From positions 124,001-188,000 of the IMG/VR virus record IMGVR_UViG_3300047321_000238: 64,000 bases of DNA. One strand, written 5' to 3'. Shown piece by piece: positions 28,021-57,048 of the stretch; the stretch's first letter is position 1; every line of letters starts with the position of its first letter. Position numbers and translations under genes: made by a program. The notes under the pieces were generated by a model that ran no database searches, was not told where the DNA came from, and saw nothing but the letters and a program-made list of their open reading frames with translations.

Positions 28021-28047
28021 TTAATAAGTCGCTTCTGATAAGTAATA
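28021..28047 (+). promoter_or_regulatory. Candidate phage-sigma (late) promoter
   Basis: TTAAT-15 bp-AGTAATA; same motif at 28672 and 57022. Confidence 0.45.
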
Positions 28048-28069
28048 TACTTTGAAAGGAGTGATTTTT

Positions 28070-28642
28070 TTGAGTAAGATAACAGATAATGATCAAATAG
28101 TATTAAAAGATGGATGGAATCAAGATGTTAATGGGTGGTTTTATGTAACAGACGTTGCTAATAAGAAATATTATACTCTTACAGACGGATGGCAAAAAAT
28201 CAAAGATTCTTGGTCTATATTTAATGATTCAGGATATGCTTATCAAAATGAATGGTATAAAGATTCTTCTGGATTGTCGTACTTCTTAGATAATGATTGT
28301 AAGATGATTATGTCTACTTGGGTATTGGTGGCTGATTCAGATATATGGTATTATATAAATGATAATGGTCAAATGTTAGTTAGTAAATGGTTTTCATACA
28401 AAGATAAGTGGTATTACCTAAAAGAAACAGGTGAAATGGCTGCAACAGATTGGGTTAAAGATAATGACAAATGGTATTATCTTAACGAGAATGGTGATAT
28501 GGCTGTTAAGCAATGGGTAGAACACAATAATAGCACATATTACTTCGATGAAAATGGAGTAATGGTGTCTGACAAAACTCTTGATATTGATGGTAAGACA
28601 TACAAGTTTGATAATAATGGAGTGTCATCGTTGGAATCATAG
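28070..28642 (+). CDS. Cell-wall/choline-binding repeat protein without catalytic domain
   Basis: Repeated W..KDKWYYL..TGEMA units; SD AAGGAG favours TTG 28070. Confidence 0.8.
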   Translation: MSKITDNDQIVLKDGWNQDVNGWFYVTDVANKKYYTLTDGWQKIKDSWSIFNDSGYAYQNEWYKDSSGLSYFLDNDCKMIMSTWVLVADSDIWYYINDNGQMLVSKWFSYKDKWYYLKETGEMAATDWVKDNDKWYYLNENGDMAVKQWVEHNNSTYYFDENGVMVSDKTLDIDGKTYKFDNNGVSSLES

Positions 28643-28671
28643 TGTTTATGAAAATTTAATACTTCAAAACA

Positions 28672-28698
28672 TTAATAGCTAACTTCGAAAAGGTAATA
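28672..28698 (+). promoter_or_regulatory. Candidate phage-sigma (late) promoter
   Basis: TTAAT-15 bp-GGTAATA upstream of the endolysin. Confidence 0.45.
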
Positions 28699-28744
28699 AA
28701 ATCTAGAAGTGTTTTATTACTAAATAGGAGAGAGGTGAAATTAA

Positions 28745-30064
28745 ATGGAACAAAAAACATTTATAAGTCTTATAAAAGACGGTGCTATAGAATCACAAAG
28801 TACTTATAAAATTCTTGCAAGTATTACTATTGCTCAAGCTATTTTAGAGAGTGGATGGGGTACTAGTGAATTATATCTTAAAGCAAATAATTGCTTTGGT
28901 ATAAAGTGGACAGAAGGTTGCGGATATGATAAGTATTTAAAAATCACTAAGGAGATTGTAGATGATATAGAAATAACTGTACAAGCCTATTTTAGAAAAT
29001 ATAATAGTCTTAAAGATAGTATTTTAGATCACTCTTTATTCTTACAAAAAGATAGATATAAAAATATCTTAAGTGATAGTGATTATGCATCAGTTGCTAA
29101 TAAGTTATATGCAGATGGATATAGTACAAGTCCTGAATATTCAAGTAAATTAATAATATTAATTAAACAATACAATCTATTTGATTATGATAAAAATAAT
29201 GAGAAAGAAGGCGTTACAATGACAAAATTTGCAATAGACTTTGGACATGGAGTAGGAAGCGACAGAGGAGCAGTTGGAGTTATAGCTGAAGAAACTATAA
29301 TCAATGCAGTTGGTTCTTTCGTAGTTAGTAAACTAAGAGCTCTAGGACACACAGTAGTTGAAGTTAGACCTTCAAGTGCAACAAGTGTTACAAACTCTTT
29401 ATCTCAAAGAGTATCTAAAGCAGATAATAACTATGTAGATATGTATGTTTCACTACATGCTAATGCAGGTGGTGGAGTTGGAACAGAAGTCTTCACTTAT
29501 GGTGCTAAAGAAGTACCTGAAGCAAGAAGAGTTTTAAATAACATTGTATCTTTAGGATTCACTAACAGAGGTATCAAGGATGGAAGCGACTTATATGTTG
29601 TTAAATATCCAGATGCTGTAGCAATGCTTGTAGAAGTTTGTTTTGTAGATACTCAATCTGATGTCAACAAATACAATACATTAGGTGCTGAAGCAATTGC
29701 TAATGCAATAGTAATGGGTTTATCTGGAACAATAACAGCTACAACTAAATTAGGTTGGAATCAAGATTCAACTGGTTGGTGGTACTGTACTGATATTGCT
29801 AGTAAGTCTTGCTATACTAATGCTTGGAAACAAATAGATGGAGAATGGTATAGTTTTGATGATCAAGGCTATGCAAGAAAATCTGCTTGGATTCAAGATA
29901 AAGGTCTTTGGTATTATCTACAAAGTTCATGTAAGATGGCTCATTCTGAGTGGTTATACATTAATGGCGAATCTTATTGTTTTGCTGCAAGTGGGGCATT
30001 GTACGTTAACTGCACTACTCCTGATGGCTATAAAGTGGATGCATCAGGAGCATGGATAATTTAA
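28745..30064 (+). CDS. Endolysin: GH73 glucosaminidase + Amidase_3 + cell-wall-binding repeats
   Basis: AQAILESGWG, NNCFGIK, GYSTSPEY; IDFGHG, SLHANA, LVEVCF; C-terminal W-rich repeats. Confidence 0.9.
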   Translation: MEQKTFISLIKDGAIESQSTYKILASITIAQAILESGWGTSELYLKANNCFGIKWTEGCGYDKYLKITKEIVDDIEITVQAYFRKYNSLKDSILDHSLFLQKDRYKNILSDSDYASVANKLYADGYSTSPEYSSKLIILIKQYNLFDYDKNNEKEGVTMTKFAIDFGHGVGSDRGAVGVIAEETIINAVGSFVVSKLRALGHTVVEVRPSSATSVTNSLSQRVSKADNNYVDMYVSLHANAGGGVGTEVFTYGAKEVPEARRVLNNIVSLGFTNRGIKDGSDLYVVKYPDAVAMLVEVCFVDTQSDVNKYNTLGAEAIANAIVMGLSGTITATTKLGWNQDSTGWWYCTDIASKSCYTNAWKQIDGEWYSFDDQGYARKSAWIQDKGLWYYLQSSCKMAHSEWLYINGESYCFAASGALYVNCTTPDGYKVDASGAWII

Positions 30065-30068
30065 ACAT

Positions 30069-30097
30069 TTGACAATATTATAATATCTCGATATAAT
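30069..30097 (+). promoter_or_regulatory. Consensus SigA promoter
   Basis: Perfect TTGACA-17 bp-TATAAT. Confidence 0.85.
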
Positions 30098-30150
30098 GAT
30101 ATCGTTAATGTGATAATTAAAAGTAGTTATTCTTTTTAATCATTCATTTC

Positions 30151-30180
30151 AAGACACCCGTAGTTTATGGGTGTCTTTTT
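30151..30180 (+). terminator. Rho-independent terminator
   Basis: AAGACACCC...GGGTGTCTT plus T-tract. Confidence 0.8.
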
Positions 30181-30201
30181 ATATTCAAAAATAAAGGAGG
30201 T

Positions 30202-31344
30202 TTGTTTAATAAAATGTTTCCTCAAGAATTTATAGACAAAGTAAAGGATTCTGTTGATATGAGAAAGTTAGCAGAAGAATATACTGTGTTAGAGAAAGTA
30301 GGAAATGGTGTATATAGAGGTCCTTGTCCTCATCCAGAACATGATGATAAACATCCTAGCTTTTGTGTATGGGAAAAAAGTCAATCATGGGCCTGTTTAG
30401 TATGTCACCATGGGAAAAAGACAGATAAATTTAAAAATTACGGTTCAGATTGTATAGCTTTTATAAGATGGATTAAAAAATGTTCGATGCCAATGGCTAT
30501 AGAATTTTTAGCCAATAAATATGGAATTCCTTTACCATCAAAAAAGAATCAAAAATTACTTGATATGAAAAAAGTTTTAGCTTATAGTTACATGGATAAT
30601 TTAAAAGGACAAGCTTTAAACTATTTACTTGACAGAGGTTTATCTAAAGAAGATTGTTATGAATGGGGCATCGGTTATGATGGTCAAAAAATAATATTCC
30701 CTTTATTAGATAGATATAAAAACATATTAGGATTTACTAAGAGATGGATTGTAATGCCTGAAGACAGAGACGATAAATATAAGAATTCATCAAATAGTGC
30801 AATATTCAATAAAGGTATGTATCTTTATGGAACACATAAGTTAGATTTAGAATTTAGAGAACTTAGAATAACAGAAGGTTCAATGGATGTAATATTGCCA
30901 GATAAGTATGGAGTTAAGAATATTGTTGGAACTTTAGGAACAGCATTTACTGATGGTCATATTGAAATAATAAAACATTACAAAATGATTCCTGTATTTT
31001 GCTTTGATGGAGATCCAGCAGGACTTAAAGCTATTAATAAAAGTATATTCTTGTTAGCAGAGCAAGGCATTTATTCCAAGATATTAATCTTGCCAGAAGG
31101 AAAAGATATGGCAGATTTAGCTATGGAATTAAAAGAAGATACCGAAGCCTATATTCAAGAGCATTCAATTACTTATGGTAATTATTTAATTAGTAATGAA
31201 ATGAATAGTTACTTATCTAAAGTAAATGAATTGAAACTACTTTATTACCCAAAACTTTTAAAAATTTTAAAACAAGTACCTTCTAATGATGAACAAAAAA
31301 TCCTTAAATCTCATATTAAAAATCTAATGAATATTGATATCTAA
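30202..31344 (+). CDS. dnaG: DnaG-type DNA primase
   Basis: Zinc-binding CPHPEHDDKHPSF...CLVC, KYKNS, TOPRIM ITEGSMDV, GTLGTA, FDGDPAG. Confidence 0.9.
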   Translation: MFNKMFPQEFIDKVKDSVDMRKLAEEYTVLEKVGNGVYRGPCPHPEHDDKHPSFCVWEKSQSWACLVCHHGKKTDKFKNYGSDCIAFIRWIKKCSMPMAIEFLANKYGIPLPSKKNQKLLDMKKVLAYSYMDNLKGQALNYLLDRGLSKEDCYEWGIGYDGQKIIFPLLDRYKNILGFTKRWIVMPEDRDDKYKNSSNSAIFNKGMYLYGTHKLDLEFRELRITEGSMDVILPDKYGVKNIVGTLGTAFTDGHIEIIKHYKMIPVFCFDGDPAGLKAINKSIFLLAEQGIYSKILILPEGKDMADLAMELKEDTEAYIQEHSITYGNYLISNEMNSYLSKVNELKLLYYPKLLKILKQVPSNDEQKILKSHIKNLMNIDI

Positions 31345-31355
31345 TATGTTATAAT
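31345..31355 (+). promoter_or_regulatory. Extended -10 promoter element
   Basis: TATGTTATAAT, third copy of the 11-mer; no clear -35. Confidence 0.5.
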
Positions 31356-31373
31356 ACAAGAAGAATAGGGGGA

Positions 31374-31769
31374 ATGAGTATGATATGTAAGTTATGTAAT
31401 TTAAAAGAAATTTGTAAGACCTATGATTTGATTAAGAGCATAGACTATGCAGATATTGAAGTAAATACTTGTGATTTTAATGATAATACTATTACTATGC
31501 ATGAAAGGCATAAAGAAATGCCTGTTAATCCTAAAGTAGTAGCTCAATATCAAGGTAAAGCAAAACCAGATTTAAAAGATTTGGAAAAACAAATTAACAA
31601 TGTGCCAGACAAGCCAGAGCCAGTTAAGGTTGAGTGTCCATCATGTAAAGGAACTACTTATGATGATGACATTAGAATATGCAGCAAATGTGGAAAGAAA
31701 ATTTGCAGTAATTGTGGCACTCATTTTGACAGTAAAGACTTTTGTCAAGAATGCTGGGAAAAGGAATAG
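31374..31769 (+). CDS. Multi-zinc-finger hypothetical protein
   Basis: CKLC, CPSC, CSKC, CSNC, CQEC. Confidence 0.75.
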   Translation: MSMICKLCNLKEICKTYDLIKSIDYADIEVNTCDFNDNTITMHERHKEMPVNPKVVAQYQGKAKPDLKDLEKQINNVPDKPEPVKVECPSCKGTTYDDDIRICSKCGKKICSNCGTHFDSKDFCQECWEKE

Positions 31770-31781
31770 GAGGTATAAGAC

Positions 31782-32504
31782 TTGAATACATTAAAAGAAT
31801 TAATAGAACACATTAAAAAACATAAGGACGCCGTGATTATTATTGGTTCAGAAGTTAATAAACTTAAAACAGAATATACTACAGAAGATTTCAATGAAAT
31901 CTATAATAGAAAGAATCTTAAAAGAGCTCCCGAAAAACTATGGGACTTTTACAAAGATAATATTCTTACTGAAATCGATGATAACGATATGTACAAGCTG
32001 ATAAAAGAAATGGATTATGCATTAGTTGTTAATCAAAATATTAATAGCCCATTAAGAAGTAATGCATTTGATATTCATGGAAATGTCGATAGTTATATGT
32101 GTCCTAGATGTAAAACTATATATACGAGCGACTACGTTAATACAGAGGAAGACTTAAAGAAAGACTGTGAACTATGTGGAGCAACTATAAAACCTTCAGT
32201 GTTACTTGCAGGAGAAAGATATGATCAAGCTCAATTTGATGATCTAAAAGAGAAACTTATTGCTACTCATACTTTAATACTTATTGGTATGGATTATACA
32301 GAACAACCACTATTAGATTTAGTTGCTGATTATGGAGATATAAAAGCACAAGTAAATGCTAATGGTAATCCAGACGACCAAAAAGCTTTAGTAGTTATAC
32401 AAACAGAAGAGCAAGAATTTAATCCTAATCAAATTACATTCTGTGATTTTGTAGTAAAGGGCGATATAGAAGATTCTCTAGTCAGATTTATGAAAGAGTA
32501 TTAG
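31782..32504 (+). CDS. Degenerate sirtuin (Sir2-like)
   Basis: VNQNI, IHGN, CPRC...CELCGATIKPSVLLAGE; lacks GAGIS and the GTS motif. Confidence 0.65.
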   Translation: MNTLKELIEHIKKHKDAVIIIGSEVNKLKTEYTTEDFNEIYNRKNLKRAPEKLWDFYKDNILTEIDDNDMYKLIKEMDYALVVNQNINSPLRSNAFDIHGNVDSYMCPRCKTIYTSDYVNTEEDLKKDCELCGATIKPSVLLAGERYDQAQFDDLKEKLIATHTLILIGMDYTEQPLLDLVADYGDIKAQVNANGNPDDQKALVVIQTEEQEFNPNQITFCDFVVKGDIEDSLVRFMKEY

Positions 32505-32505
32505 T

Positions 32506-32790
32506 ATGGAGTTATTAAGTTTAGTTAATTACTTTCAAAGAGGAATTACATTAAATGAAAAACTTAATATTATTACTCAGGAAGCTCGTTATAGAATAAT
32601 TAGTAATGACTTTAAAAATGAAGTTACTATGAAAATCAAAAAAGCATTTGATGATTATAATTATTTTAATTATCGTGATAATCTTATTCCTACAGTTTCA
32701 TTTGATTTATATAAAATCAATATAGATGTAAAACAAATTGAAGCTCCATTGCATCCAAGTCTTACGGGAGGTGAAGGATGGAATTATTAA
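32506..32790 (+). CDS. ME[LI]L-tag protein, array member 1 (MELLSLV)
   Basis: ORF track; starts 1 nt after the upstream stop. Confidence 0.7.
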   Translation: MELLSLVNYFQRGITLNEKLNIITQEARYRIISNDFKNEVTMKIKKAFDDYNYFNYRDNLIPTVSFDLYKINIDVKQIEAPLHPSLTGGEGWNY

Positions 32791-33326
32791 AATATGTTCA
32801 AGAAATAGAAGAAAATATAATAACAATACCAAATGATTATGGACTTGATCCAAGTCGTATACGTAGTGGAATTTCTATTTATGGCACTGGAGGTTCAATA
32901 GTTGGCACTATGAGTAATATTGATTATCAACCTAGTGAAGACATAAGTGGGTTAATTAATACAAATCTTTCTGGTAGTATATCTCTTGCTAATACTTATG
33001 TACCTGGCGAGACAATGACGGGAAGATTAGAAGTACCTGCTTTTGATGATAGAATTATGCTTTCTGACGGTATGAGTTCAGCTTTTACAGCAGCTACTGC
33101 GTTAAGAATGGCTCCTTCTGTTTCTGAAGAGATTTTAGAAGCTATTCAAAATACAATTAGAGAAGCTATTATAGAAGAATTCAGAAGTATACGTGTTTCA
33201 CCAAGCGATACTGTTACTTATACTTATACTCCACCTAATCATATGGAATATATGACCACAAGAATAGATTTAAGAGCTGAACCAGAAACTTCAGCTCTTG
33301 ATGAACCTCCAACGGAGGATGAATAA
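32778..33326 (+). CDS. ME[LI]L-tag protein, array member 2 (MELLKYV)
   Basis: SD GGAGGTG. Confidence 0.75.
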   Translation: MELLKYVQEIEENIITIPNDYGLDPSRIRSGISIYGTGGSIVGTMSNIDYQPSEDISGLINTNLSGSISLANTYVPGETMTGRLEVPAFDDRIMLSDGMSSAFTAATALRMAPSVSEEILEAIQNTIREAIIEEFRSIRVSPSDTVTYTYTPPNHMEYMTTRIDLRAEPETSALDEPPTEDE

Positions 33327-33327
33327 T

Positions 33328-33579
33328 GTGGAGATATTAAGGTATATAAAAGATGATTATGTTTATGTTTCTATGTTAGATAGGCTAAAGAATCTTGAGA
33401 TGAAAAACAGTATGATTGAATCTCAATTATGCATATTAATGTCACAATCTAATAATTCATGGGAACACAAAATGAAAATAGATAATGCATTAGCATCTAT
33501 AACAAATGTATTCTTAGAGTTAGGCATAGATTCAAATAAACTTAATCGAATAACAGATGCTTTAAAGGAAGTATTGTAA
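33328..33579 (+). CDS. ME[LI]L-tag protein, array member 3 (GTG start, MEILRYI)
   Basis: SD GGAGGA 8 nt before GTG 33328, in frame with track ORF 33298. Confidence 0.7.
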   Translation: MEILRYIKDDYVYVSMLDRLKNLEMKNSMIESQLCILMSQSNNSWEHKMKIDNALASITNVFLELGIDSNKLNRITDALKEVL

Positions 33580-33580
33580 G

Positions 33581-33847
33581 ATGGAGATATTAAATTATAT
33601 AAATACAGAATTAACCAAACGTTTTAATAGTCCAGGAATAACACTTGCTAAAATACCATCAATAAGTAGGATGACATCTACAAATTTAACTAATGCTATT
33701 CAAAATAATTTTGAAAATAAAACATTTTATGTTGGTGATATTGTTATGAATAATGAAAATGGAAATAGAAATATGAATTTTTATATGTATAATGGAACAG
33801 AGTTTGAAATGATTACTCAAGGAGGAGGAATATATGGAATTACTTAG
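33581..33847 (+). CDS. ME[LI]L-tag protein, array member 4 (MEILNYI)
   Basis: Starts 1 nt after the upstream stop. Confidence 0.7.
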   Translation: MEILNYINTELTKRFNSPGITLAKIPSISRMTSTNLTNAIQNNFENKTFYVGDIVMNNENGNRNMNFYMYNGTEFEMITQGGGIYGIT

Positions 33848-34175
33848 TTTTTTAAATAGCTCAAGCATTGAAGATATTCCTCTGCTTGAGTTAGAATCTC
33901 AATTAAAACAATTAAAGCAAACAGTTAGGACAAACTATTTAACAGTTACTTATGGTTCAAGAATTAAACCAATTAAGTGTGTTAGAGAGTATTACTTAAA
34001 TCCACTAACTAAAAAGAAAGTACCTAAAATAAACATTGTAAATGCTTGTACTTCAATACATGGTACATTTGGCATTAAAGATTGTGCCTCCGTTGATTGT
34101 AATAGTTGTCATCGAAAGATGATAGAGAATTACTTTAATGGGGAGGCATATTTAATCAAAAATAATAAAAAATAG
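33834..34175 (+). CDS. ME[LI]L-tag protein, array member 5 (MELLSFL), Cys-rich C-terminus
   Basis: SD GGAGGAGG. Confidence 0.7.
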   Translation: MELLSFLNSSSIEDIPLLELESQLKQLKQTVRTNYLTVTYGSRIKPIKCVREYYLNPLTKKKVPKINIVNACTSIHGTFGIKDCASVDCNSCHRKMIENYFNGEAYLIKNNKK

Positions 34176-34186
34176 CAGAAAAAACA

Positions 34187-34215
34187 TTGACAAGCTATTT
34201 TTTACTATATATACT
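34187..34215 (+). promoter_or_regulatory. SigA-type promoter
   Basis: TTGACA-17 bp-TATACT upstream of hup. Confidence 0.8.
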
Positions 34216-34252
34216 AAATATATAATTTAAATATGAAGGGAAGTTTTTTAAA

Positions 34253-34528
34253 ATGAATAAAAACGAATTAATATCATCAATGGCAGACAAGAGCAAATTA
34301 TCAAAGAAGGATGCTGAATTAGCATTAAAAGCTTTGATAGAAACAGTTGAAGAAACTTTAGTAAATGGGGACAAGGTTGCATTAGTTGGCTTTGGAACAT
34401 TTGAAACTAGAGAAAGAGCTGCTAGAGAAGGAAGAAATCCTAGAACTAAGGAAGTTATAAACATTGCTGCATGTACTGTTCCTGTATTTAAAGCTGGTAA
34501 GGATTTCAAAGATAAGGTTAATAAATAA
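34253..34528 (+). CDS. hup: Histone-like protein HU
   Basis: MNKNELI, LVGFGTFE, AAREGRNPRT, VPVFKAGK. Confidence 0.95.
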   Translation: MNKNELISSMADKSKLSKKDAELALKALIETVEETLVNGDKVALVGFGTFETRERAAREGRNPRTKEVINIAACTVPVFKAGKDFKDKVNK

Positions 34529-35345: not shown

Positions 35346-35444
35346 TTAAATAAATATTTTAAATATTTAATGCTAGGTTATAAATATACGACCTAGCGTT
35401 AGTAATATAAGAGTAAATATTTATTTAATAGAGGAGAGAAGATT

Positions 35445-37664
35445 ATGCTAACGATAAGTAAAAGAGATGGTAGAGAACAAAAATTTGATTTATGGAAAGT
35501 TCAACATTCAATTAACCAAGCTGCATTTTCAATTAAGATGGAATTAAATACTATAGAATATGAAGAAGTCTTTAATAAATGCAAAGAATTAATTGGAGAA
35601 GATGGTGTTGTAGACGTAGAAAAACTACAAAATGCAATTGAAAAAGCATTGTATTTATGTGGTCACAGAAAAATAAGAGATTCTTATAAATCTTATAGAA
35701 AAGATCGTACACAAATTCGTGATACTAAATCAGATATCATGAAAGCCATTAATGCTATAGGTGTACAAACTGATAGAGATAATGCTAATGTTGGAAACAA
35801 CTTTAGTGCGAAGTTACTTAGAATAGCTTCTGAATCTAATAAGTGGACACAATTAGCTTTGATGCCTAAAGACCTAGCTAAAGAACATGAGAATTTAGAT
35901 TTATATTTTCATGACTTAGATAGTTATAACTTAACTCTTAATTGTCTTCATATACCTACAGGACAAATTCTTCAAAGAGGATTCAATACTGGATATGGAA
36001 CAATTAATAAGCCTAAGAGAATAGAAACAGCTGCAGATTTATCATGCATTCTTATGCAATCAACTCAAAATGATATGTTTGGTGGTCAATCACATCCAAA
36101 CTTTGATAATGATATGGCTCCATTTGTAGAATCTTCAAGACAAGAAATTGCTGAAGAACATTATTCTAGAATTGGTGAATTTGTTTCTGACGGATATTTT
36201 CATTATATCACTAAGAATAAAGAATCAATAGAAAAAGATATTGAAGTGAAAGTTGATAAATCAGTACATCAAGCTATGCAAGGAGTGGTTTATAATTTAA
36301 ATACCATGCATTGCCGTGCAGGTTCTCAAGTTCCATTTAGTTCAATTAATATAGGACTACCTGAATCTGAAGATGCAGCACTAGTATGCAAAGCGTTTTT
36401 AGAAGAATATGATAAAGGTCTAGGAAAAGGTGAACAACCTATATTCCCTAACATCATATTCAGAGTTAAATCAGGAGTTAATAGAGAGCCATCAGATCCA
36501 TATTACTACTTATTTAAGTTAGCTTGTAAAGTAGCTGCTAAAAGAATGAATCCTACATTTATGAATATAGATGCAGACTTCAATAAAGAGTATTATGATA
36601 AGGGATATATTCCTGCAACTATGGGATGCAGAACTGCATTAATGTCTAATGTTAATGGAGATCCTGGTGTTGAGGGTAGAGGTAACAATGCACCTACTAC
36701 TATTAATCTTCCTAGATTAGGTATTAGAGCAATGCTTTATGCAGATGAAGCAGTCAAAGAAGTAAACATGGTTGTTACAAGATATGATAATTACTATAAT
36801 AGTATTGTTGTTGCAAAGTTCTTTGAATTATTTGATGAAAAGATATCTTTATCTAGAGATTCATTAATGCATAGATACGGAGTACTGAAGAATCTAAGAG
36901 TTAAAGATTTACCATTCGTGGCAGGTCAAGGATTAATGAAAGGTTCTGAAGGGCTAGGACCAAATGATTCTATTGAACCAATACTTAAAAATGGTACTTG
37001 GGGAATAGGGTTTACAGGGCTTGCTGAAACATTAATAGCTATATGTGGTAAACATCATGGTGAAAGTGAATACGCAAGAGACTTAGGTGAGCAAATCATT
37101 ACTCATTTAAGAAATAGATGTGACGAATATAAAGAGATAGACAAAATGAATTGGAGTTGTTACGCAACACCTGCAGAAGGTCTTTCAGGCAAATTCGTTC
37201 CAGTGGATAGAAAAATATATGGAAATATTCCAGGTGTAACTGATAAAGATTACTATACAAATAGTTATCATGTTCCAGTTGATTGTATTATATCTATTAA
37301 AGATAAAATAGCAATCGAAGCACCATACCATAAACTTTGTAATGGAGGACATATTTCTTATATTGAAATGGATGATTATCCAGATGGAGACACTATTGAA
37401 AATATAATTAGATATGCTTACGAAAATACAAATATAAGTTATATGGGTATTAACTTTCATATAAGATATTGTAAAGACTGTGGAACTTATCTTCATGGAG
37501 AAAATGAATGTCCAAGTTGTGACAGTCATGAAATCCAAGGTATCTCTAGAGTTACAGGATATTTAAGTCTTGATGAGAGATTTGGTCCAGGAAAGTCTGC
37601 AGAAAGAGCAGCGAGAACTAATCATAATGGAAATCATAAAAATAATTATTATTTGGAGGAATAG
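35445..37664 (+). CDS. nrdD: Anaerobic ribonucleoside-triphosphate reductase (class III) with ATP cone
   Basis: ISKRDG ATP cone, QNDMFGGQS, ATMGCR, YATPAE, CxxC...CxxC, ISRVTGYL glycyl-radical motif. Confidence 0.95.
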   Translation: MLTISKRDGREQKFDLWKVQHSINQAAFSIKMELNTIEYEEVFNKCKELIGEDGVVDVEKLQNAIEKALYLCGHRKIRDSYKSYRKDRTQIRDTKSDIMKAINAIGVQTDRDNANVGNNFSAKLLRIASESNKWTQLALMPKDLAKEHENLDLYFHDLDSYNLTLNCLHIPTGQILQRGFNTGYGTINKPKRIETAADLSCILMQSTQNDMFGGQSHPNFDNDMAPFVESSRQEIAEEHYSRIGEFVSDGYFHYITKNKESIEKDIEVKVDKSVHQAMQGVVYNLNTMHCRAGSQVPFSSINIGLPESEDAALVCKAFLEEYDKGLGKGEQPIFPNIIFRVKSGVNREPSDPYYYLFKLACKVAAKRMNPTFMNIDADFNKEYYDKGYIPATMGCRTALMSNVNGDPGVEGRGNNAPTTINLPRLGIRAMLYADEAVKEVNMVVTRYDNYYNSIVVAKFFELFDEKISLSRDSLMHRYGVLKNLRVKDLPFVAGQGLMKGSEGLGPNDSIEPILKNGTWGIGFTGLAETLIAICGKHHGESEYARDLGEQIITHLRNRCDEYKEIDKMNWSCYATPAEGLSGKFVPVDRKIYGNIPGVTDKDYYTNSYHVPVDCIISIKDKIAIEAPYHKLCNGGHISYIEMDDYPDGDTIENIIRYAYENTNISYMGINFHIRYCKDCGTYLHGENECPSCDSHEIQGISRVTGYLSLDERFGPGKSAERAARTNHNGNHKNNYYLEE

Positions 37665-51307: not shown

Positions 51308-51338
51308 TAGGAGCTCTTCCTTTAAAGGAGATAAACAT

Positions 51339-51506
51339 ATGGAAATATTAAAACACTTACAAGACGTAGAAAAGGAAATTGAAAAAGAATGGACTGAGAT
51401 ATTATTTTACCGTGTGTGGAGAAGATATGGATACACTACTGGAACTGAAGTTGTAATAGGTAGAAATGGAACTAAATACACAGCAATATCAAGAGATAAA
51501 GAATAG
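51339..51506 (+). CDS. ME[LI]L-tag protein (MEILKHL; 55 aa, below track cut-off)
   Basis: SD AAGGAG; open frame to TAG 51504-51506. Confidence 0.7.
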   Translation: MEILKHLQDVEKEIEKEWTEILFYRVWRRYGYTTGTEVVIGRNGTKYTAISRDKE

Positions 51507-51701
51507 ATGGAAATATTAAAATACTTACAAGATTTAAAAGAAGAAGAGATGACACTTCCATATATAAAATATGAAGGTGATACTTTAACAAAAGAAATAT
51601 TTGATAAGATGATAAGCTCTTTAGGAATTCCTAGTCATCTGCTTAATATTGAGCCAGCAATACCAAGAAGTTACAGTAGAGGAAGAAGAGGAGGTCAATA
51701 A
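51507..51701 (+). CDS. ME[LI]L-tag protein (MEILKYL)
   Basis: ATG directly after TAG. Confidence 0.7.
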   Translation: MEILKYLQDLKEEEMTLPYIKYEGDTLTKEIFDKMISSLGIPSHLLNIEPAIPRSYSRGRRGGQ

Positions 51702-52175
51702 GTGGAATTACTTAATTATGTAAATAACATGTATGAGTTTATGGCATTAGGATCCATGGAGAACAAAACAGAAGCTAATATTAAAGAACATATCATATGC
51801 TTCTTTAGTAATGACTATGACAAGTCATGGTGTTCTAACATAAATACAAACATGCCATGCATAACAGAAGCAGAAATAGAAGATGAGTTGTATAACTTAA
51901 ACATATTAATAGCTTATGAGACTTATATAGTAAATAATGGCGGACGTAATTGTGCCTTTTGTTTATTCAGACATAAAGTAACTAGAGAATACTATTATCT
52001 TAAATGCGATATAGATTCAGCTCATGGATTTGAAGGTTATTTTATATTAAACAAATTAGAGAAACTATCTGAGATGTTACCTATAGATGTAAGTGAATCA
52101 TCACAAGCTAAAGCAACTGAAGTAAAAGAAAAGATAAGAGATTATATAAGAGAATATGTTCCTATGCGTGATTAG
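51702..52175 (+). CDS. ME[LI]L-tag protein (GTG start, MELLNYV)
   Basis: SD GGAGG; GTG directly after TAA. Confidence 0.75.
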   Translation: MELLNYVNNMYEFMALGSMENKTEANIKEHIICFFSNDYDKSWCSNINTNMPCITEAEIEDELYNLNILIAYETYIVNNGGRNCAFCLFRHKVTREYYYLKCDIDSAHGFEGYFILNKLEKLSEMLPIDVSESSQAKATEVKEKIRDYIREYVPMRD

Positions 52176-52210
52176 GAACTTTCTCTTAATCATGAAAGGA
52201 ATGAGGAAAC

Positions 52211-53533
52211 ATGTTATTTTCAATGTATATAATAAAAGACAGAAGAATTAAAATAGCAGGATTAATAAAGAACATAAAGGACGAACAAGAAGACTTAGCT
52301 ACAGAAAAAGGCCGAGTAAATGGTTTTGTATATGACATAAAGTTAGCACTTAAAGAATTTAAATATACAGCTGATTCAAATCTATTAGAACATTATGATA
52401 ATATATTAAATTCATCTTTAAGAAATATCGCAAGTTCAACTACAGGTGAATTAATGAAACAACACTTAGATGTATTATCTAATACTTTAGACAGTATCGA
52501 AACAGATAAATATAATAATGCAAACAGTGGAAGTTATAGAGTTATAAGCCCAAGAATAATTTCATCTATAATGCCACACATAAATAATGGAAGTAGACCT
52601 TTTACAATATTTGATCCAGAATGTAAAGATGGAATATTATTAAAAGAAGCAAAAAACATAAATACAAATGCAGTCCTCTACGGACTAGAAGAAGGAAACA
52701 ACTTAGCTGAAAAAGCTAAAGAATCTGTTGATAAAGTCATAAAAGGAAAGCTAAAAGGAACTAGAATTTCTAATGACGCTTTTGATATGGTTTATTGTGT
52801 TACACATATAACTACAGAACTACAAGACAATATGAGTTGTGGTGCTATTTCTAAAGTAGAAAAAATGCACATAATGAATATGATGAAATATTTAAGATCC
52901 AATGGAGTAATCATGATTGCTATTCCTTATTATAGAATGCATAAAGACATATGCACTATGTTATCGAGGCAACTAATAAACGTATCTGTTATTAAAGGTA
53001 TGGGAGATGATGAAGAAAAAGGAATTATATATATAGTCGGTCAAAAATGTAAATCTAAAGAGTTAGATGAAGAAATATACGAATCACTCAGAAAGTGTTA
53101 TAATTATGATAATGTAAAATATATTCACGAAGCAGAAATATCAACTTTTACTTTACCTAATATTGCTATAGATATAGATATCTTTAAAGGTTCTGTTCTA
53201 GATACAAATGAACTATTAAATATAGTACAAACTTCTGGATGTGTAGATGCATTCTTCGAAAGACAAAAAGTCAAGAAGATACATGAAAACACAATCAGAC
53301 CATTACTTCCTTTTAATGTTGGACAAATTGGCTTAGTACTTACATCTGGATGCCTTGATGGTATTATCGATGAAGGGGACAACCATTTCCATTTAGTAAA
53401 AGGTAGAGTATCAAAGAAGACAGAGACTGAAAGAACTACAAATAATGGAGTAGTAGAAGAAACAGAAGTTATATCAAACAGAGTAGAAATAAATGTTATA
53501 TTACCAAACGGAGATTTTAAAACTTTAGCATAG
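52211..53533 (+). CDS. Degenerate class I SAM methyltransferase-fold protein (DUF6094-like)
   Basis: IFDPECKDG (motif I-like), YGLE, FDMVY; NPPY motif absent; RPLLP...GLVLTSGCLDG...HLVKG tail. Confidence 0.6.
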   Translation: MLFSMYIIKDRRIKIAGLIKNIKDEQEDLATEKGRVNGFVYDIKLALKEFKYTADSNLLEHYDNILNSSLRNIASSTTGELMKQHLDVLSNTLDSIETDKYNNANSGSYRVISPRIISSIMPHINNGSRPFTIFDPECKDGILLKEAKNINTNAVLYGLEEGNNLAEKAKESVDKVIKGKLKGTRISNDAFDMVYCVTHITTELQDNMSCGAISKVEKMHIMNMMKYLRSNGVIMIAIPYYRMHKDICTMLSRQLINVSVIKGMGDDEEKGIIYIVGQKCKSKELDEEIYESLRKCYNYDNVKYIHEAEISTFTLPNIAIDIDIFKGSVLDTNELLNIVQTSGCVDAFFERQKVKKIHENTIRPLLPFNVGQIGLVLTSGCLDGIIDEGDNHFHLVKGRVSKKTETERTTNNGVVEETEVISNRVEINVILPNGDFKTLA

Positions 53534-53544
53534 GAGATAAAACA

Positions 53545-53604
53545 ATGATAATAGCGATGATTGTATCAATAGTATTATCAATTATAATTATATGGAAACT
53601 CTAA
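53545..53604 (+). CDS. Possible 19-aa single-TM peptide
   Basis: SD AGGAG; MIIAMIVSIVLSIIIIWKL. Confidence 0.4.
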   Translation: MIIAMIVSIVLSIIIIWKL

Positions 53605-53628
53605 AACAGGAGAGATAGAGGAGATAAT

Positions 53629-53913
53629 ATGAGTGAATTATTAAAACAAGTAAATAAACTATTCCCAAAAGCCAATTTCAAGAATGGAATGGTTGTGGAA
53701 TTAGATACACGAAAAAGAAGATTGTTTTGGGAAGGTCGATTTATTGATGGGACAGGTTATATTCCATTAGGTTATTATGATAACGAATTAAACAATATGG
53801 ATACTATAAATCATACTGACAATATAAATAAAATATATCTATCTCATGATGTTGGATATTTTGAAGACTTTTTTAGAGACGCTAGTTTGACTGAAATTTG
53901 GAGAAGAGAATAA
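53629..53913 (+). CDS. Hypothetical protein (MSELLK start)
   Basis: SD GAGGAG. Confidence 0.7.
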   Translation: MSELLKQVNKLFPKANFKNGMVVELDTRKRRLFWEGRFIDGTGYIPLGYYDNELNNMDTINHTDNINKIYLSHDVGYFEDFFRDASLTEIWRRE

Positions 53914-53930
53914 TAGGAAAGGAGAATATC

Positions 53931-56900
53931 ATGGCTGATATAAAATTAAAAAGATTAACAATAGGAAAGAATAGCTATGTTCATTTTGATACAATAGTAA
54001 CAGATGAATTCAGTGGCCAATTAGTTTTTGCATCATTAGTGGATAATGATAAAGACTTAAAAGTAAATCAATATGAAGTAAATAAAAAGAATTCTGTTTA
54101 CATTGAATCTACTAAAAGATATGTATCTACAGATGGAAACAAATATGACATAGATAAAAGAAAATCATCAGGATCTGATTTTGGACATTTAGTTCTAAAC
54201 AAGAAAGATTCTGTAGAAACATTGCAAGAAGATAATGAATTGCTAACAGCTTATGTATATGCAAAAGAAACAGATAGTTTAGATGCTAAACTTTATGACA
54301 AGCTATATGCCAATACATCTATTCCAATGTTGGAGGCATGGATGCCATATTTAAAAGATGAAATGTTTAAGCATCAATACTTAAGACAACTTAATATTAT
54401 AACAATCTATGACACTAATCCTTTTGAATCATATAGATTAAGAGTATCTAAAGTTCAACTATTAGAACTTATTCAAAGAGGAATTCAAAATAAACATATA
54501 AACATTAATAATTCTTATGAAAATTCTGAACTAATGGAGTTCACAAATGGACTTGATAGTTACTTAAATGTATTTGGAGACACATTAGCTCAAAGAATAC
54601 AAGAATCCTTCTCACCAAAATTCAATCCTAATACAGATGAATATTCAGAATATGTTAATAACTACGATGATAGTTGTTTTCATAACGGAATAGAATTGTA
54701 TAATGCTCAAAAGGCTACAATACAAGCAGCTGTAAATAACTTAAACGTTAACAATGTTACATTAGTTATAGGAGAAATGGGATGCGGTAAAACCGCTGTA
54801 GGCTCAGGAATTGCATATGCTCATTATGGTAAAAAATCAGGAATGACAAATGTTGTGATGTGCCCTTCACATTTAGTTGAAAAATGGAAGAGAGAAGTAG
54901 AGAGATTAGTACCTAACGGTAAAGGATATATAATAAGAGATATCGGAGACTTAATAAACATAGAGAGAAAAATTAAGAATAAGAATAAACCAGAAAATAC
55001 ATTCTTAATATTATCAAAGGAAACTGCAAAGTTTTCTTATGAAACAAGACCTGCTGGTGTTTGGTCAAGAACCAAAGACACATTCTTATGTCCATGTTGT
55101 GGACAACCTTTATATAAGAAAGAAAGAATAGGATCAGGTAGAAGTGCAACAACAATTATAAAAGACTTTGATAAATTAGATTTTCAAACTCAATTAGTAT
55201 ATAACAGCAGATGTCAAAACAAAGTAAGAGTATATAACACTAAGACTTCCAAATTTGAAGAGAAGCTTTGTGATACCGACTTGTGGGTGCCACTAAATAA
55301 AGAAGACCGAAACACTGGCTGGATAAAGCTAGGTAAGGAAGGTTGGGTTCAAAAGAAACACGTTAATGATGTGTTCAACGAATTAACAGCTAAGGCAACC
55401 GTAACTAAAAAAGAAGCTGCATTATATACAAAGATAATAGAAGCTAAGAATGCTATAGAAGATGGAGAAGAAATGAAAGGCTTAAAGGCCCCAAGAAAAT
55501 ATAGCATTGCAAAATATATAAGAGAAAGATTTAATGGAAACATAGATTATTTCTTAGCAGACGAATTACACTTGTACAAAGGTGATTCTAAGCAAGGTCA
55601 AGCAATGGCAGATATAGCAAGTGCATCTAATCATTTTATCGGATTAACAGGAACACTGTTAAATGGATATGCAGATGGACTATTTTATATCCTTTATAGA
55701 ACATTACCAAAACTTATGAAGAGTGAGGGATTTGAATATAAAGATGAAGCCGTATTCATGAGAACATATGGAGTTGTTAAAAAGAAAAGTTCATATTCAT
55801 TTACTAACGGAGTAATTGGAGAAAGAGTTGGAATGAGTAACGAGAAAAAGTTACCAGGAGTCTCACCAATAGTATTTACAAAATTCTTACTTGAAAATTC
55901 AGTATTCTTATCATTAAGTGATATGGACGGAGGATTACCAAGTTATGAAGAGATACCTCTAGTTGTAGAAATGGATAGAGAATTAAAAGATGCTTACTCA
56001 AGACTTGAAAGAGAACTAAGAGAAGCATGTAGTTTTAACAGTGGTAGACGATCTGGTGCTGGTGGAGGAATGAAGATAATGGGTTCTTTATTGCAAACAT
56101 TATCAGTATATCCTGATATGCCATATAACCAACCAGCAGTGTTACATCCAGATACCAATGAAGTTATTGTAGTTCCTCCAGTATTACCTGAAGGATTAAG
56201 AAATAAAGAGAGAGCGTTATTGGCTTTAGTTCAAGAGAAGATTGAACGAGGCGAGAAAGTATTAATCTATTATGAATGGACTAATAGAACTGACGTAGCT
56301 CAAAAGTTAAGTACGATGCTTACAGATAATAATATAAATGCTGTTGTCATGACTTCCACTACTGCTGCGGCGGAAAGAGAAGAATGGATAGATAAGCAAC
56401 TTGAAAAAGGTATTGATGTATTAATCTGTAATCCAAAGCTAGTTGAAACTGGATTGGATCTTTTAGCATTTACTTCTATTGTATTCTATCAAGTAGGATA
56501 TAATATATTTACAATGAGACAAGCTTCAAGAAGAAGCTGGAGATTATCTCAAACTGAAGACATTAAGGTTTACTTCTTATATTATGAAGGAACCATTCAA
56601 GCCCAAGCACTTAGTCTAATGGCAACTAAACTTCAAGCATCTATGGCAATAGAAGGTAAGTTCTCAGAAGAAGGTTTACGAGCTATGAGTAATAACGAAG
56701 ATTTATTAACTCAAATAGCGAACTCTGTAGTAGAAGGTATCAAAGATACTGTACAAGTTCAAGGCTTTGCTTCTGTAGAATCAAAGGATAGGGAACATAA
56801 TGAGAGTAGAACAAGACTTCCACTCAAGTATTTATTAGTTGTTAAACCTATTACTTATTCTCTACCATATCTTAACCGACCATTAGCTATTAATAATAAA

Positions 56901-56978
56901 ACTCTTAAATCAAACAAAACATCATTAGCTGACTTATTAAACTCTAAAACTTCACTTTCTTCTCTCCTTTACTTATGA
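53931..56978 (+). CDS. Large SF2/SNF2-like helicase of the methyltransferase-helicase pair type
   Basis: GEMGCGKT, CPSHLVEKW, ADELH, LTGTLLNG, NP.LVETGLDL, QASRRSWR; SD AAGGAG favours ATG 53931. Confidence 0.85.
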   Translation: MADIKLKRLTIGKNSYVHFDTIVTDEFSGQLVFASLVDNDKDLKVNQYEVNKKNSVYIESTKRYVSTDGNKYDIDKRKSSGSDFGHLVLNKKDSVETLQEDNELLTAYVYAKETDSLDAKLYDKLYANTSIPMLEAWMPYLKDEMFKHQYLRQLNIITIYDTNPFESYRLRVSKVQLLELIQRGIQNKHININNSYENSELMEFTNGLDSYLNVFGDTLAQRIQESFSPKFNPNTDEYSEYVNNYDDSCFHNGIELYNAQKATIQAAVNNLNVNNVTLVIGEMGCGKTAVGSGIAYAHYGKKSGMTNVVMCPSHLVEKWKREVERLVPNGKGYIIRDIGDLINIERKIKNKNKPENTFLILSKETAKFSYETRPAGVWSRTKDTFLCPCCGQPLYKKERIGSGRSATTIIKDFDKLDFQTQLVYNSRCQNKVRVYNTKTSKFEEKLCDTDLWVPLNKEDRNTGWIKLGKEGWVQKKHVNDVFNELTAKATVTKKEAALYTKIIEAKNAIEDGEEMKGLKAPRKYSIAKYIRERFNGNIDYFLADELHLYKGDSKQGQAMADIASASNHFIGLTGTLLNGYADGLFYILYRTLPKLMKSEGFEYKDEAVFMRTYGVVKKKSSYSFTNGVIGERVGMSNEKKLPGVSPIVFTKFLLENSVFLSLSDMDGGLPSYEEIPLVVEMDRELKDAYSRLERELREACSFNSGRRSGAGGGMKIMGSLLQTLSVYPDMPYNQPAVLHPDTNEVIVVPPVLPEGLRNKERALLALVQEKIERGEKVLIYYEWTNRTDVAQKLSTMLTDNNINAVVMTSTTAAAEREEWIDKQLEKGIDVLICNPKLVETGLDLLAFTSIVFYQVGYNIFTMRQASRRSWRLSQTEDIKVYFLYYEGTIQAQALSLMATKLQASMAIEGKFSEEGLRAMSNNEDLLTQIANSVVEGIKDTVQVQGFASVESKDREHNESRTRLPLKYLLVVKPITYSLPYLNRPLAINNKTLKSNKTSLADLLNSKTSLSSLLYL

Positions 56979-56979
56979 T

Positions 56980-57010
56980 AAGATACGTCTAGTATCTTCT
57001 CTTTTTCTTT
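56980..57010 (+). terminator. Rho-independent terminator
   Basis: AAGATAC-5-GTATCTT then a pyrimidine/T tract. Confidence 0.55.
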
Positions 57011-57021
57011 TTATTCTCTAT

Positions 57022-57048
57022 TTAATTTTATAACTATGAATGGTAATA
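57022..57048 (+). promoter_or_regulatory. Candidate phage-sigma (late) promoter
   Basis: TTAAT-15 bp-GGTAATA. Confidence 0.45.

What the first reader, a model, noticed from the sequence alone, without database searches (positions are those of the whole stretch)
28021..57048. Candidate late promoter TTAAT-N15-RGTAATA upstream of all three cell-wall or lysis units
Seen: exact motif with 15-bp spacing at 28021-28047 (cell-wall-binding protein), 28672-28698 (endolysin) and 57022-57048 (operon containing the 1138-aa lytic protein). One-mismatch copies occur at 35381-35407 (nrdD) and 23898-23924. These sites lack SigA consensus, whereas 2512, 19833, 30069 and 34187 have it. Known: SigF/SigB-family sigmas read a GG-containing -10 with roughly 14-15 bp spacing. 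Inference: this is the regulon of the sigma at 8444. Caveat: the motif was derived post hoc in AT-rich DNA.
Basis: partly seen in the sequence, partly recalled or inferred. Interest (0 to 1): 0.7.

Follow-up and report, generated by a model that had tools for sequence, protein, structure and literature searches.

The report
Late promoter of a jumbo phage

Summary
The motif is real. There are three exact copies in the window against 0.13 expected. Four more lie in the rest of the 247.9-kb phage genome against 0.66 expected, two of them directly before the holin gene and the first gene of the virion module. Searching without the motif in mind, GTAATAT(A) is the most enriched non-RBS word in upstream intergenic DNA (22 against 2.6 expected). 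It is sense-oriented, lies 25-48 nt before start codons, is 54-fold enriched in the structural modules, and has a second element (TTAATA/…ATA) at a fixed 14-15 bp spacing. SigA-consensus promoters occur only in the replication module. The GTAAT core marks late-gene orthologues in all five related ~240-kb phages tested, so "late promoter" is supported.

The assignment to the sigma at 8444 is not supported. That SigF-like protein has no homologue in two relatives that keep the motif. A second, highly diverged 295-aa sigma lies outside the window (genome 193814-194701) and is present in all five, so it is the better candidate.

The phage also encodes a YonO/QDE-1-like two-barrel RNA polymerase and a stand-alone sigma-region-2 protein. 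Both remain rivals. No transcription start data exist. This is a new member of a known kind and moderately interesting.

The parts
23898..23926 (+). Late-type promoter: TTTATA-N14-AGTAATATA. It is the best-scoring site in the window (PWM 24.1), with its G 45 nt before the start codon at 23964.
   Evidence: a GTAATAT is kept before the G002 orthologue
23964..24260 (+). 98-aa stand-alone sigma-region-2-like protein, followed by an SNF2 helicase (24273-26102)
   Evidence: Weak Sigma70_r2 and ECF-sigma N-terminal hits. 54 of 100 ESM-Atlas neighbours lie in clusters of which some members carry Sigma70_r2. It carries a DDIIQESWLNIWL motif and has orthologues in G001 and G002 only. SNF2 helicase.
28021..28049 (+). 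Late-type promoter: TTAATA-N14-AGTAATATA, with its G 28 nt before the TTG start at 28070
   Evidence: the G001 homologue carries TTAATA..AAGTAATATA at 46 nt
28070..28642 (+). Cell-wall-binding protein with choline-binding repeats
   Evidence: Pfam PF01473, PF19127 and PF19085
28672..28700 (+). Late-type promoter: TTAATA-N14-GGTAATAAA. It is weaker (PWM 11.0), with its G 52 nt before the start codon.
28745..30064 (+). Endolysin: glucosaminidase plus Amidase_3 plus choline-binding repeats
35381..35409 (+). Late-type promoter: TAAATA-N14-AGTAATATA (PWM 22.9), with its G 43 nt before nrdD
   Evidence: GTAATAT lies 49 and 52 nt before the nrdD orthologues of G001 and G002
35445..37664 (+). Anaerobic ribonucleotide reductase NrdD
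   Evidence: Pfam NRDD, E 2e-178
57022..57050 (+). Late-type promoter: TTAATT-N14-GGTAATATT (PWM 18.4), with its G 28 nt before the ATG at 57071
57071..61420 (+). Four-gene unit: two small ORFs, a 1138-aa probable peptidoglycan hydrolase (57656-61072) and a 103-aa ORF
   Evidence: ORFs. Amidase_2 and NlpC/P60 hits are below Pfam cut-offs (E 3e-4 and 5e-4).
61415..61437 (.). Two-way terminator hairpin that closes the unit, where the + and - gene blocks meet
8444..9655 (+). SigF/G-like sigma with a C-terminal extension of about 190 aa. It directly follows gyrA.
   Evidence: Pfam Sigma70_r2 and r4. TIGR02980 SigBFG at 102 bits, below the 234 cut-off. Best PDB match is SigF 1L0O_C. Absent from G001 and G004.
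2512..2540 (+). SigA-consensus promoter TTGAAA-N17-TATAAT
19833..19861 (+). SigA-consensus promoter TTGATA-N17-TATAAT
30069..30097 (+). SigA-consensus promoter TTGACA-N17-TATAAT
34187..34215 (+). SigA-consensus promoter TTGACA-N17-TATACT

Best explanation
The motif is the late promoter class of a 248-kb phage that probably infects a clostridial-type Firmicute. Its refined form is a -35-like TTAATA (the ATA is the most conserved part), 14 bp, then a -10-like AGTAATAT(A). Read as a sigma-70-type promoter it is TTAATA-N16-TAATAT, with the A at the second position and the T at the sixth position of the hexamer kept in variant sites. Transcription would then start about 7 nt after the hexamer, giving leaders of roughly 12-35 nt that hold only the ribosome-binding site.

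The signal drives the virion modules, the holin, the endolysin, the cell-wall binder, the 1138-aa hydrolase unit, nrdD and a few other genes. Replication genes use host SigA-type promoters.

The most likely reader is host core RNA polymerase carrying the phage's conserved 295-aa sigma (genome 193814-194701, minus strand, outside the window), not the SigF-like sigma at 8444.

Shown: the motif, its spacing, its orientation, its place before late genes, its conservation in relatives, and which sigma genes each relative has. Inferred: that it is a promoter, where transcription starts, that it acts late, and which protein reads it.
For: GTAATAT and GTAATATA are the most enriched non-RBS words in upstream intergenic DNA (22 against 2.4-2.6 and 14 against 0.9-1.0 expected).

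26 of 98 genomic GTAATAT lie 20-125 nt before a same-strand start, where 7.3% of random positions fall.

Sense orientation outnumbers antisense 22 to 4, and 16 of 22 copies lie 25-48 nt from the start codon.

ATA sits at -18..-16 in 12 of 26 gene-proximal copies against 3 of 72 other copies.

GTAATATA is 54-fold enriched in structural-module upstream regions (9 of 28), while SigA-consensus promoters lie only in the replication module.

Downstream genes are the holin, major head protein, sheath, head-like and tail-fibre-like proteins, the endolysin and others.

In relatives, GTAATATA is again the top or near-top upstream word in G001 and G002, and it is kept at the same distance before orthologous late genes.

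The GTAAT core occurs before late-gene orthologues far more often than before other genes in all five genomes: 21/30 against 18/79, 14/23 against 7/41, 16/21 against 4/34, 11/15 against 3/22, and 8/16 against 1/27.

On the reader of the motif: the 295-aa protein has Sigma70_r4. Its model matches only sigma factors over about 260-280 columns. It is 75% and 68% identical in G001 and G002 and present in all five genomes. It has 395 homologues, many on 240-253-kb contigs, and its r4 helix residues are invariant. It gives a weak hit to the ArpU packaging/lysis regulator family.

No multisubunit or T7-type polymerase is encoded.
Against: There is no transcription start, timing or binding evidence. 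The only RNA-library runs hold fragments of relatives and gave no 5' ends.

The case for the 295-aa sigma rests on presence and absence in only five genomes, and gene calls in all five are my own simple ORF model.

G001 has no terminal repeats, though CheckV rates it complete.

The fixed-spacing -35 element is seen in G000-G002 only, and these are also the three genomes that carry the two-barrel polymerase and the sigma-2-only protein.

The motif does loosely resemble SigF-type promoters: a G before an A-rich -10, an ATA in the -35, and 14-15 bp spacing.

Some strong sites precede non-structural genes (nrdD and the helicase unit).
Confidence: 0.5

Rival explanations
1. One reading: host core polymerase with the SigF/G-like sigma encoded at 8444-9655 reads the motif.
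For: It is a complete sigma with regions 2 and 4. Its best family and structure matches are SigB/F/G and SigF. The motif has an ATA in its -35, a G just before the -10, and 14-15 bp spacing, which recalls SigF-type promoters (my own knowledge of the B. subtilis and C. difficile consensus; PMC3789822 notes the conserved G upstream of the SigF -10). The gene sits in the replication module, so it could be expressed before late genes.
Against: tblastn, phmmer and a three-sequence profile find no homologue in G001 or in G004, which is complete with terminal repeats. In G001 the gyrA-recA slot is empty, and the only other r4-like hit there is a LAGLIDADG endonuclease. Both genomes keep the GTAAT signal before late genes. 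The r4.2 helix is nearly that of SigF, but the motif's -35 is T[AT]ATA and lacks the G. The genome has no canonical SigF/G promoter set. Phage SigF/G homologues are known to act on host sporulation genes (PMC9429907).
Confidence: 0.12
2. The phage's own two-barrel (YonO/QDE-1-like) RNA polymerase reads the motif. It is encoded at genome 57299-62242, outside the window. It might act alone or with the sigma-2-only protein or the 295-aa sigma.
For: The 1647-aa protein folds like QDE-1 and RDR2 (Foldseek E 2e-10, about 700 columns) and like the crAss phi14:2 virion polymerase. It has a conserved DFDID motif. YonO of SPbeta transcribes that phage's late genes (PMC5467207). The distant relative 0305phi8-36 has a YonO-like gene and a phage-specific promoter motif (PMC2147016). 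The fixed-spacing two-part form of the motif is seen only in the three genomes that carry this polymerase.
Against: A 30-sequence profile does not find it in G004 or G005, yet the GTAAT core still marks their late genes. A two-element promoter with sigma-70-like geometry is what sigma-dependent host polymerase uses. YonO lacks most sigma-binding domains (PMC5467207). The early block at 53-120 kb has almost no SigA-type promoters and is an equally good target for this enzyme.
Confidence: 0.15
3. A host sigma reads it, either SigA helped by a phage activator or a host alternative sigma. The phage sigmas would then serve other purposes.
For: TTAATA-N16-TAATAT matches TTGACA-N17-TATAAT at 4 of 6 positions in each hexamer. 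Late promoters of phi29 and of lambdoid phages work this way (general knowledge; PMC3100819).
Against: The conserved letters (the G before TAATAT, and TAATAT rather than TATAAT) are not those of SigA. True SigA-consensus promoters exist in the same genome and are kept to another gene class. This model leaves the strongly conserved 295-aa sigma without any visible regulon.
Confidence: 0.1
4. It is not a promoter. It would be an AT-rich word favoured for another reason, such as an RNA-level leader element, a processing site or a binding site for a DNA-packaging or nucleoid protein.
For: No transcript data exist. The genome is 30.5% G+C, so AT-rich words are common. Some PWM hits lie inside genes.
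Against: The evidence includes strand bias, a narrow distance to start codons, a second element at one fixed spacing, restriction to one gene class, and conservation in diverged relatives. At 25-28 nt from the start codon the element is too close to be followed by both a separate promoter and a leader.
Confidence: 0.05

Closest known systems
Late promoters of Bacillus phage SPO1, read by gp33/gp34, and of coliphage T4, read by gp55/gp33
   Same: A lytic phage re-programmes host core polymerase with its own highly diverged sigma-like protein(s). These recognise an AT-rich late-gene signal unlike the host -10/-35 (PMC2988020 for T4; my own knowledge for SPO1).
   Different: The sequence differs (TTAATA-N14-AGTAATATA against CGTTAGA..GATATT for SPO1 and TATAAATA for T4). 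The candidate sigma here is one 295-aa chain with both sigma-2 and sigma-4 parts. No sliding-clamp coupling is implied.
phiEco32 and phage 7-11 gp36, a phage sigma for middle and late genes
   Same: A single phage-coded sigma-70-family protein directs host core polymerase to a phage-specific two-part promoter (PMC8948821, PMC12276001).
   Different: The host and phage lineages are unrelated, and there is no sequence relationship. Here two or three sigma-like genes and a phage polymerase occur together.
SigF/SigG promoters, and phage-encoded SigF/SigG homologues
   Same: The sigma at 8444 is closest to SigF. The motif shares the ATA of the -35, a G before the -10 and the short spacer. Phages of spore-formers often carry such sigmas (PMC9429907).
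   Different: The -35 lacks the G. The sigma falls below the curated family cut-offs and is missing from relatives that keep the motif. In the studied cases such sigmas act on host sporulation genes.
YonO of SPbeta, and orf99 of Bacillus phage 0305phi8-36 with its 21-bp motif
   Same: This is the same broad phage lineage (head protein 36% identical to that of 0305phi8-36). A single-chain two-barrel polymerase is encoded, and YonO transcribes late genes (PMC5467207, PMC2147016).
   Different: YonO's promoter is unknown. The 0305phi8-36 motif was proposed for middle genes. The GTAAT signal persists here in relatives without the polymerase. The cultured relative vB_BceM_WH1 lacks the motif in its structural module.

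Membership tests
Sigma-70-family-dependent two-part promoter | Two conserved elements at a fixed spacing of about 16-18 bp between hexamers | tested here: met
   There is a spacing peak at N15 only. ATA lies at -18..-16 in 12/26 gene-proximal copies against 3/72 other copies in G000, 8/19 against 3/82 in G002 and 6/20 against 9/91 in G001.
Sigma-70-family-dependent two-part promoter | Sense-oriented and a short distance upstream of genes or operons | tested here: met
   Sense outnumbers antisense 22 to 4. The distance to the start codon is 25-48 nt for 16 of 22 copies. The enrichment is 26 of 98 against 7.3% expected.
Sigma-70-family-dependent two-part promoter | Transcripts start 5-9 nt after the -10 element | not testable with these tools
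   Only DNA runs hold this genome. RNA-library runs hold fragments of relatives and show no 5' ends.
Phage late promoter class | Precedes structural and lysis genes and is distinct from the early or middle promoter class | tested here: met
   It precedes the holin, head, sheath, fibre-like and endolysin genes. It is 54-fold enriched in structural modules, while SigA-type promoters lie only in the replication module. The pattern holds in five genomes. Timing itself was not measured.
SigF/SigG-type promoter | -35 element GYATA or GNATR with a conserved G | tested here: not met
   The corresponding positions read T[AT]ATA in the top sites. The consensus used for comparison is from my own knowledge and from PMC3789822.
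SigF/SigG-type promoter | -10 element with an upstream G and conserved A residues, about 14-15 bp from the -35 | tested here: inconclusive
   AGTAATAT has one G, and GG in 3 of the window sites, with A at matching positions. The spacing fits. Canonical patterns are otherwise rare in the genome.
SigB/SigF/SigG subfamily (protein at 8444-9655) | Score over the curated NCBIfam cut-off | tested here: not met
   TIGR02980 gives 102.5 bits against a 234 cut-off. The SigF and SigG equivalog models give 82 and 81 bits against 321 and 457. It does pass the general sigma-70 superfamily model.
Sigma-70 family (295-aa protein, genome 193814-194701) | Region 4 helix-turn-helix plus a region 2 domain | tested here: met
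   Sigma70_r4 and r4_2 pass the Pfam cut-offs. Region 2 is seen only at fold level: the AF2 model (pLDDT 81) matches sigma factors exclusively over 260-280 columns, with weak E-values (0.004-0.3).
Sigma-70 family (295-aa protein) | Binds core polymerase and directs promoter-specific initiation | not testable with these tools
YonO/QDE-1 two-barrel RNA polymerase (genome 57299-62242) | Double-psi beta-barrel polymerase fold with a catalytic DxDxD motif | tested here: met
   Foldseek gives E 2e-10 to RDR2 and QDE-1, probability 1.0. A DFDID or DWDID motif is conserved. Pfam PF05183 reaches only 14.5 bits against a 23.8 cut-off.

The most novel reading that the evidence does not exclude
In this phage clade the late promoters might be read by the phage's own single-chain two-barrel (YonO/QDE-1-like) polymerase, guided by a sigma-like specificity factor: the 295-aa sigma and/or the 98-aa stand-alone sigma-2 protein. 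That would be the first sigma-dependent polymerase of this type, and it would supply the missing promoter logic for YonO-like enzymes.
Probability: 0.07. Interest if true: 0.9.

Novelty: new member of a known kind. Interest (0 to 1): 0.5.

Why it matters
The finding gives an uncultured family of ~240-kb soil and wastewater phages a testable transcription programme. Host SigA promoters would serve replication genes, and a phage-specific TTAATA-N14-AGTAATATA class would serve virion and lysis genes. The motif can be used to annotate late operons and start codons across hundreds of related contigs.

It also separates two roles for phage sigmas in one genome. One is a conserved, very diverged sigma that probably runs late transcription. 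The other is a patchy SigF-like sigma that may instead act on the host, as described for Bacillus phages.

The co-occurrence of two sigmas, a sigma-2-only protein and a two-barrel polymerase makes this clade a good place to ask what YonO-type enzymes recognise.

Tried and rejected
- **No close phage record.** Megablast of the lysis region against GenBank phages found nothing.
- **No relatives of the 8444 sigma in IMG/VR.** A search with that sigma found none.
- **No RNA evidence.** The two run searches found only DNA runs for this genome, plus RNA-library runs holding fragments of relatives. Laying those fragments on the head-protein gene gave no 5' ends and no proof of transcription.
- **A second candidate motif was dropped.** ATATGTA in the early block is enriched in G000 only and is not conserved.
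- **No canonical SigF/SigG set.** Scans for canonical SigF and SigG patterns gave a handful of scattered hits.
- **Common polymerase families absent.** Pfam models for multisubunit and T7-type polymerases found nothing. PF05183 detects the two-barrel polymerase only marginally, and not at all in its orthologues.
- **PDB sequence search uninformative.** A search with the polymerase profile gave no useful hit.
- **Cultured relative lacks the motif.** The structural module of vB_BceM_WH1 has no GTAAT motif.
- **Sites set aside.** PWM hits before the sheath and the 3081-aa gene lie inside upstream coding sequence, so their conservation may be due to the protein.
- **Not analysed.** G003, a 154-kb fragment, was left out.


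Full report
**What the window is.** The window is bases 124001-188000 of a single 247,883-bp virus record. The record has direct terminal repeats, 30.5% G+C and comes from a rhizosphere metagenome. Nearly all window genes are on the + strand. They encode DNA metabolism functions: a ClpX-like ATPase, GyrB, GyrA, a sigma factor, RecA, UvrD-type and SNF2 helicases, Mu Gam, NrdD, an NAD ligase, Pol III alpha and a methyltransferase. The window also holds a cell-wall-binding protein, an endolysin and a 1138-aa probable peptidoglycan hydrolase. By my own simple ORF and codon-usage gene calls, the genome has a minus-strand virion module (38-52861), a plus-strand block (53227-185072) and a second minus-strand block (185519-247781). 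PHROG matches place the large terminase subunit, portal, major head protein and sheath in the first module. The holin, a tail-fibre-like protein and a DNA polymerase lie in or beside the last block.

Exact TTAAT-N15-RGTAATA occurs three times in the window, at the stated coordinates, against 0.13 expected. The one-mismatch copies at 23898 and 35381 are present. Because the motif was derived from the window, the rest of the genome is an independent test. It holds four further exact copies against 0.66 expected, and none of 150 simulations reached four. One of these lies 38 nt before the holin, a lone plus-strand gene among minus-strand genes. Another lies 41 nt before the first gene of the virion module. 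Spacing N15 gives seven copies genome-wide, against zero to three at every other spacing from 10 to 21.

- Among all 6-8-mers in 113 upstream intergenic regions, the only strongly enriched words besides ribosome-binding sites are GTAATAT (22 against about 2.5 expected) and GTAATATA (14 against about 1).
- Of 98 genomic GTAATAT, 26 lie 20-125 nt before a same-strand start, where 7.3% of random positions fall.
- The word is sense-oriented (22 against 4), and 16 of 22 copies lie 25-48 nt from the start codon.
- Gene-proximal copies carry ATA at -18..-16 from the G in 12 of 26 cases, against 3 of 72 for other copies.
- A position matrix refined on these sites gives TTAATA-N14-AGTAATATATA.
The "one-mismatch" sites at 23898 (24.1) and 35381 (22.9) are among the best in the genome.

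**The signal marks one gene class.**
- In upstream regions of the two structural blocks GTAATATA is 54-fold enriched (9 of 28 regions). In the 53-120-kb block of small genes it is not enriched.
- Strong sites precede the first virion-module gene (three sites in tandem), the major head protein (two in tandem), a 907-aa head-like protein, the holin, and proteins of 455, 456, 685 and 258 aa in the second structural block. In the window they precede the cell-wall binder, the endolysin, the hydrolase unit, nrdD and a 98-aa gene ahead of the SNF2 helicase.
- Near-consensus SigA promoters lie only in the replication module, including before the DNA polymerase operon.
- The hydrolase unit ends at a two-way terminator at 61415-61437.

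**Relatives confirm function.** The head protein finds a family of ~240-kb IMG/VR phages. I fetched four whole genomes:
- G001: 245 kb, head protein 86% identical, 24.8% G+C.
- G002: 247 kb, 73% identical.
- G004: 238 kb, with terminal repeats.
- G005: 242 kb.

GTAATATA is the top or near-top non-RBS upstream word in G001 and G002. It is 6- to 14-fold enriched in all five genomes. GTAATAT is kept at nearly the same distance before orthologues of the head protein, the 907-aa and 455-aa proteins, the first module gene, the holin, nrdD and the cell-wall binder, although the proteins are only 25-85% identical. In every genome the GTAAT core occurs before late-gene orthologues far more often than before other genes, with odds ratios of 8-26 and p from 1e-5 to 7e-4. 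The fixed-spacing ATA element is shared by G000, G001 and G002. In two G004 late-gene promoters read by eye (the head-protein and 907-aa-protein orthologues), the upstream element is GAAATA one base closer. I conclude that this is a functional late-gene control element, and its anatomy is that of a promoter. No transcript 5' ends could be obtained, so the start site and the timing remain inferred.

Its region 4.2 helix is almost identical to that of SigF in PDB 1L0O.

The genome has a second sigma of 295 aa at genome 193814-194701 on the minus strand. Region 4 passes the Pfam cut-offs. The N-terminal 170 residues are unrecognisable by sequence, but the AlphaFold model (pLDDT 81) matches only sigma factors over nearly its full length. 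It has 395 homologues, many on 240-253-kb contigs.

The decisive comparison is this. tblastn, phmmer and a three-sequence profile find no homologue of the SigF-like sigma in G001, where the gyrA-recA slot is empty and the only other r4-like hit is a LAGLIDADG endonuclease, and none in the complete G004. The 295-aa sigma is present in all five genomes, at 75% and 68% identity in G001 and G002. Both sigma-poor genomes keep the motif before late genes. In addition, the motif's -35 lacks the G of SigF/G promoters, and no canonical SigF/G promoter set exists in the genome. Phage SigF/G homologues are known to redirect host sporulation genes (PMC9429907), which would suit a patchy accessory gene.

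**A further rival appeared.** The family is distantly related to Bacillus phage 0305phi8-36, vB_BceM_WH1 and Moorella phage MTATph1. Phage 0305phi8-36 carries a YonO-like polymerase and a phage-specific promoter motif (PMC2147016, PMC7824862). A 1647-aa protein at genome 57299-62242 gave a marginal RdRP-family hit and RdRP-family Atlas neighbours. It has a conserved DFDID motif. A confident model of its core (pLDDT 84.5) matches QDE-1 and RDR2 at E 2e-10 and the crAss-like virion polymerase. The phage therefore encodes a two-barrel single-chain RNA polymerase, and YonO transcribes SPbeta late genes (PMC5467207). However, a 30-sequence profile finds it only in G000-G002 and not in G004 or G005, which still show the GTAAT association with late genes. 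It may instead serve the 53-120-kb block, which has almost no SigA-type promoters.

The 98-aa gene behind the strongest window site looks like a stand-alone sigma region 2 domain and is likewise limited to G000-G002. Its role is open.

**Verdict.** The late-promoter reading is supported by position, orientation, spacing, gene class and conservation. The assignment to the sigma at 8444 is not supported. The best candidate reader is the conserved 295-aa sigma with host core polymerase (about 0.5). The two-barrel polymerase (0.15), the SigF-like sigma (0.12) and a host sigma with an activator (0.1) remain as rivals. The mechanism is of a well-known kind, phage sigma-directed late transcription, in an undescribed phage family with an unusually rich set of transcription proteins.

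Noticed in passing
Outside the window: genome 57299-62242 (+), L006:7299-12239: A 1647-aa protein is a YonO/QDE-1-like two-barrel single-chain RNA polymerase. Its core model matches RDR2 and QDE-1 at E 2e-10, and it has a conserved DFDID motif. Many homologues carry a Rho_N domain. It is present in G000-G002 and not found in G004 or G005.
   Followed up: yes
Outside the window: genome 193814-194701 (-), L013:13817-14701: A second, very diverged 295-aa sigma factor. It is conserved at 68-75% identity in close relatives, is present in all five family genomes and has 395 database homologues. It lies in a tightly packed operon with a Cys-rich nuclease-like gene.
   Followed up: yes
window 23964-24260: A 98-aa stand-alone sigma-region-2-like protein with a DDIIQESWLNIWL motif lies directly behind the strongest late-type site in the window. 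It has orthologues in G001 and G002 only. It could be a partner or a competitor for core polymerase.
   Followed up: partly
window 30069-30177: A perfect SigA-consensus promoter (TTGACA-N17-TATAAT) is followed about 55 nt later by a strong terminator-like hairpin (30151-30177), ahead of the next gene at about 30202. This could be an attenuator or a small RNA, or the hairpin may simply be the endolysin terminator.
   Followed up: no
Outside the window: genome about 69250-71850 (+): A repeated element, TTTTTCTT(C/T)TGCACGC followed by AACATATGTTTAT, occurs three to four times just before small early-block genes. TGCACGC is 63-fold enriched there and is absent from the relatives' upstream regions.
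   Followed up: partly
Outside the window: genome 52897-52985 (-) and 39380-39412 (-): Late-type -10 elements occur in tandem. There are three about 40 nt apart before the first virion-module gene and two 21 nt apart before the major head protein. The tandem pair before the head protein is kept in G001 and G002.
   Followed up: partly
L049:7494-8261 (G001): In relative G001 a LAGLIDADG homing endonuclease sits between gyrB and a shortened gyrA (719 aa against 847 aa), which suggests a mobile intron or intein-type insertion.
   Followed up: partly
G004 (L071-L082), for example 112879, 118462 and 149348: Relative G004 has a different abundant upstream word, CATAATATA (18 against 1.7 expected), often just after T-rich terminators. 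It lies mostly before replication-type genes. This may be a separate promoter class that shares the TAATATA core.
   Followed up: partly
window 9120-9655: The SigF-like sigma carries a C-terminal extension of about 190 aa after region 4, with no Pfam match. The G002 homologue has the same length, and the G005 homologue (226 aa) lacks the extension.
   Followed up: no
Outside the window: genome about 114800-120300: This stretch is gene-poor and has tRNA-like sequence (GGTTCGATTCC motifs) between the early block and the replication module. It was not scanned with a tRNA finder.
   Followed up: no
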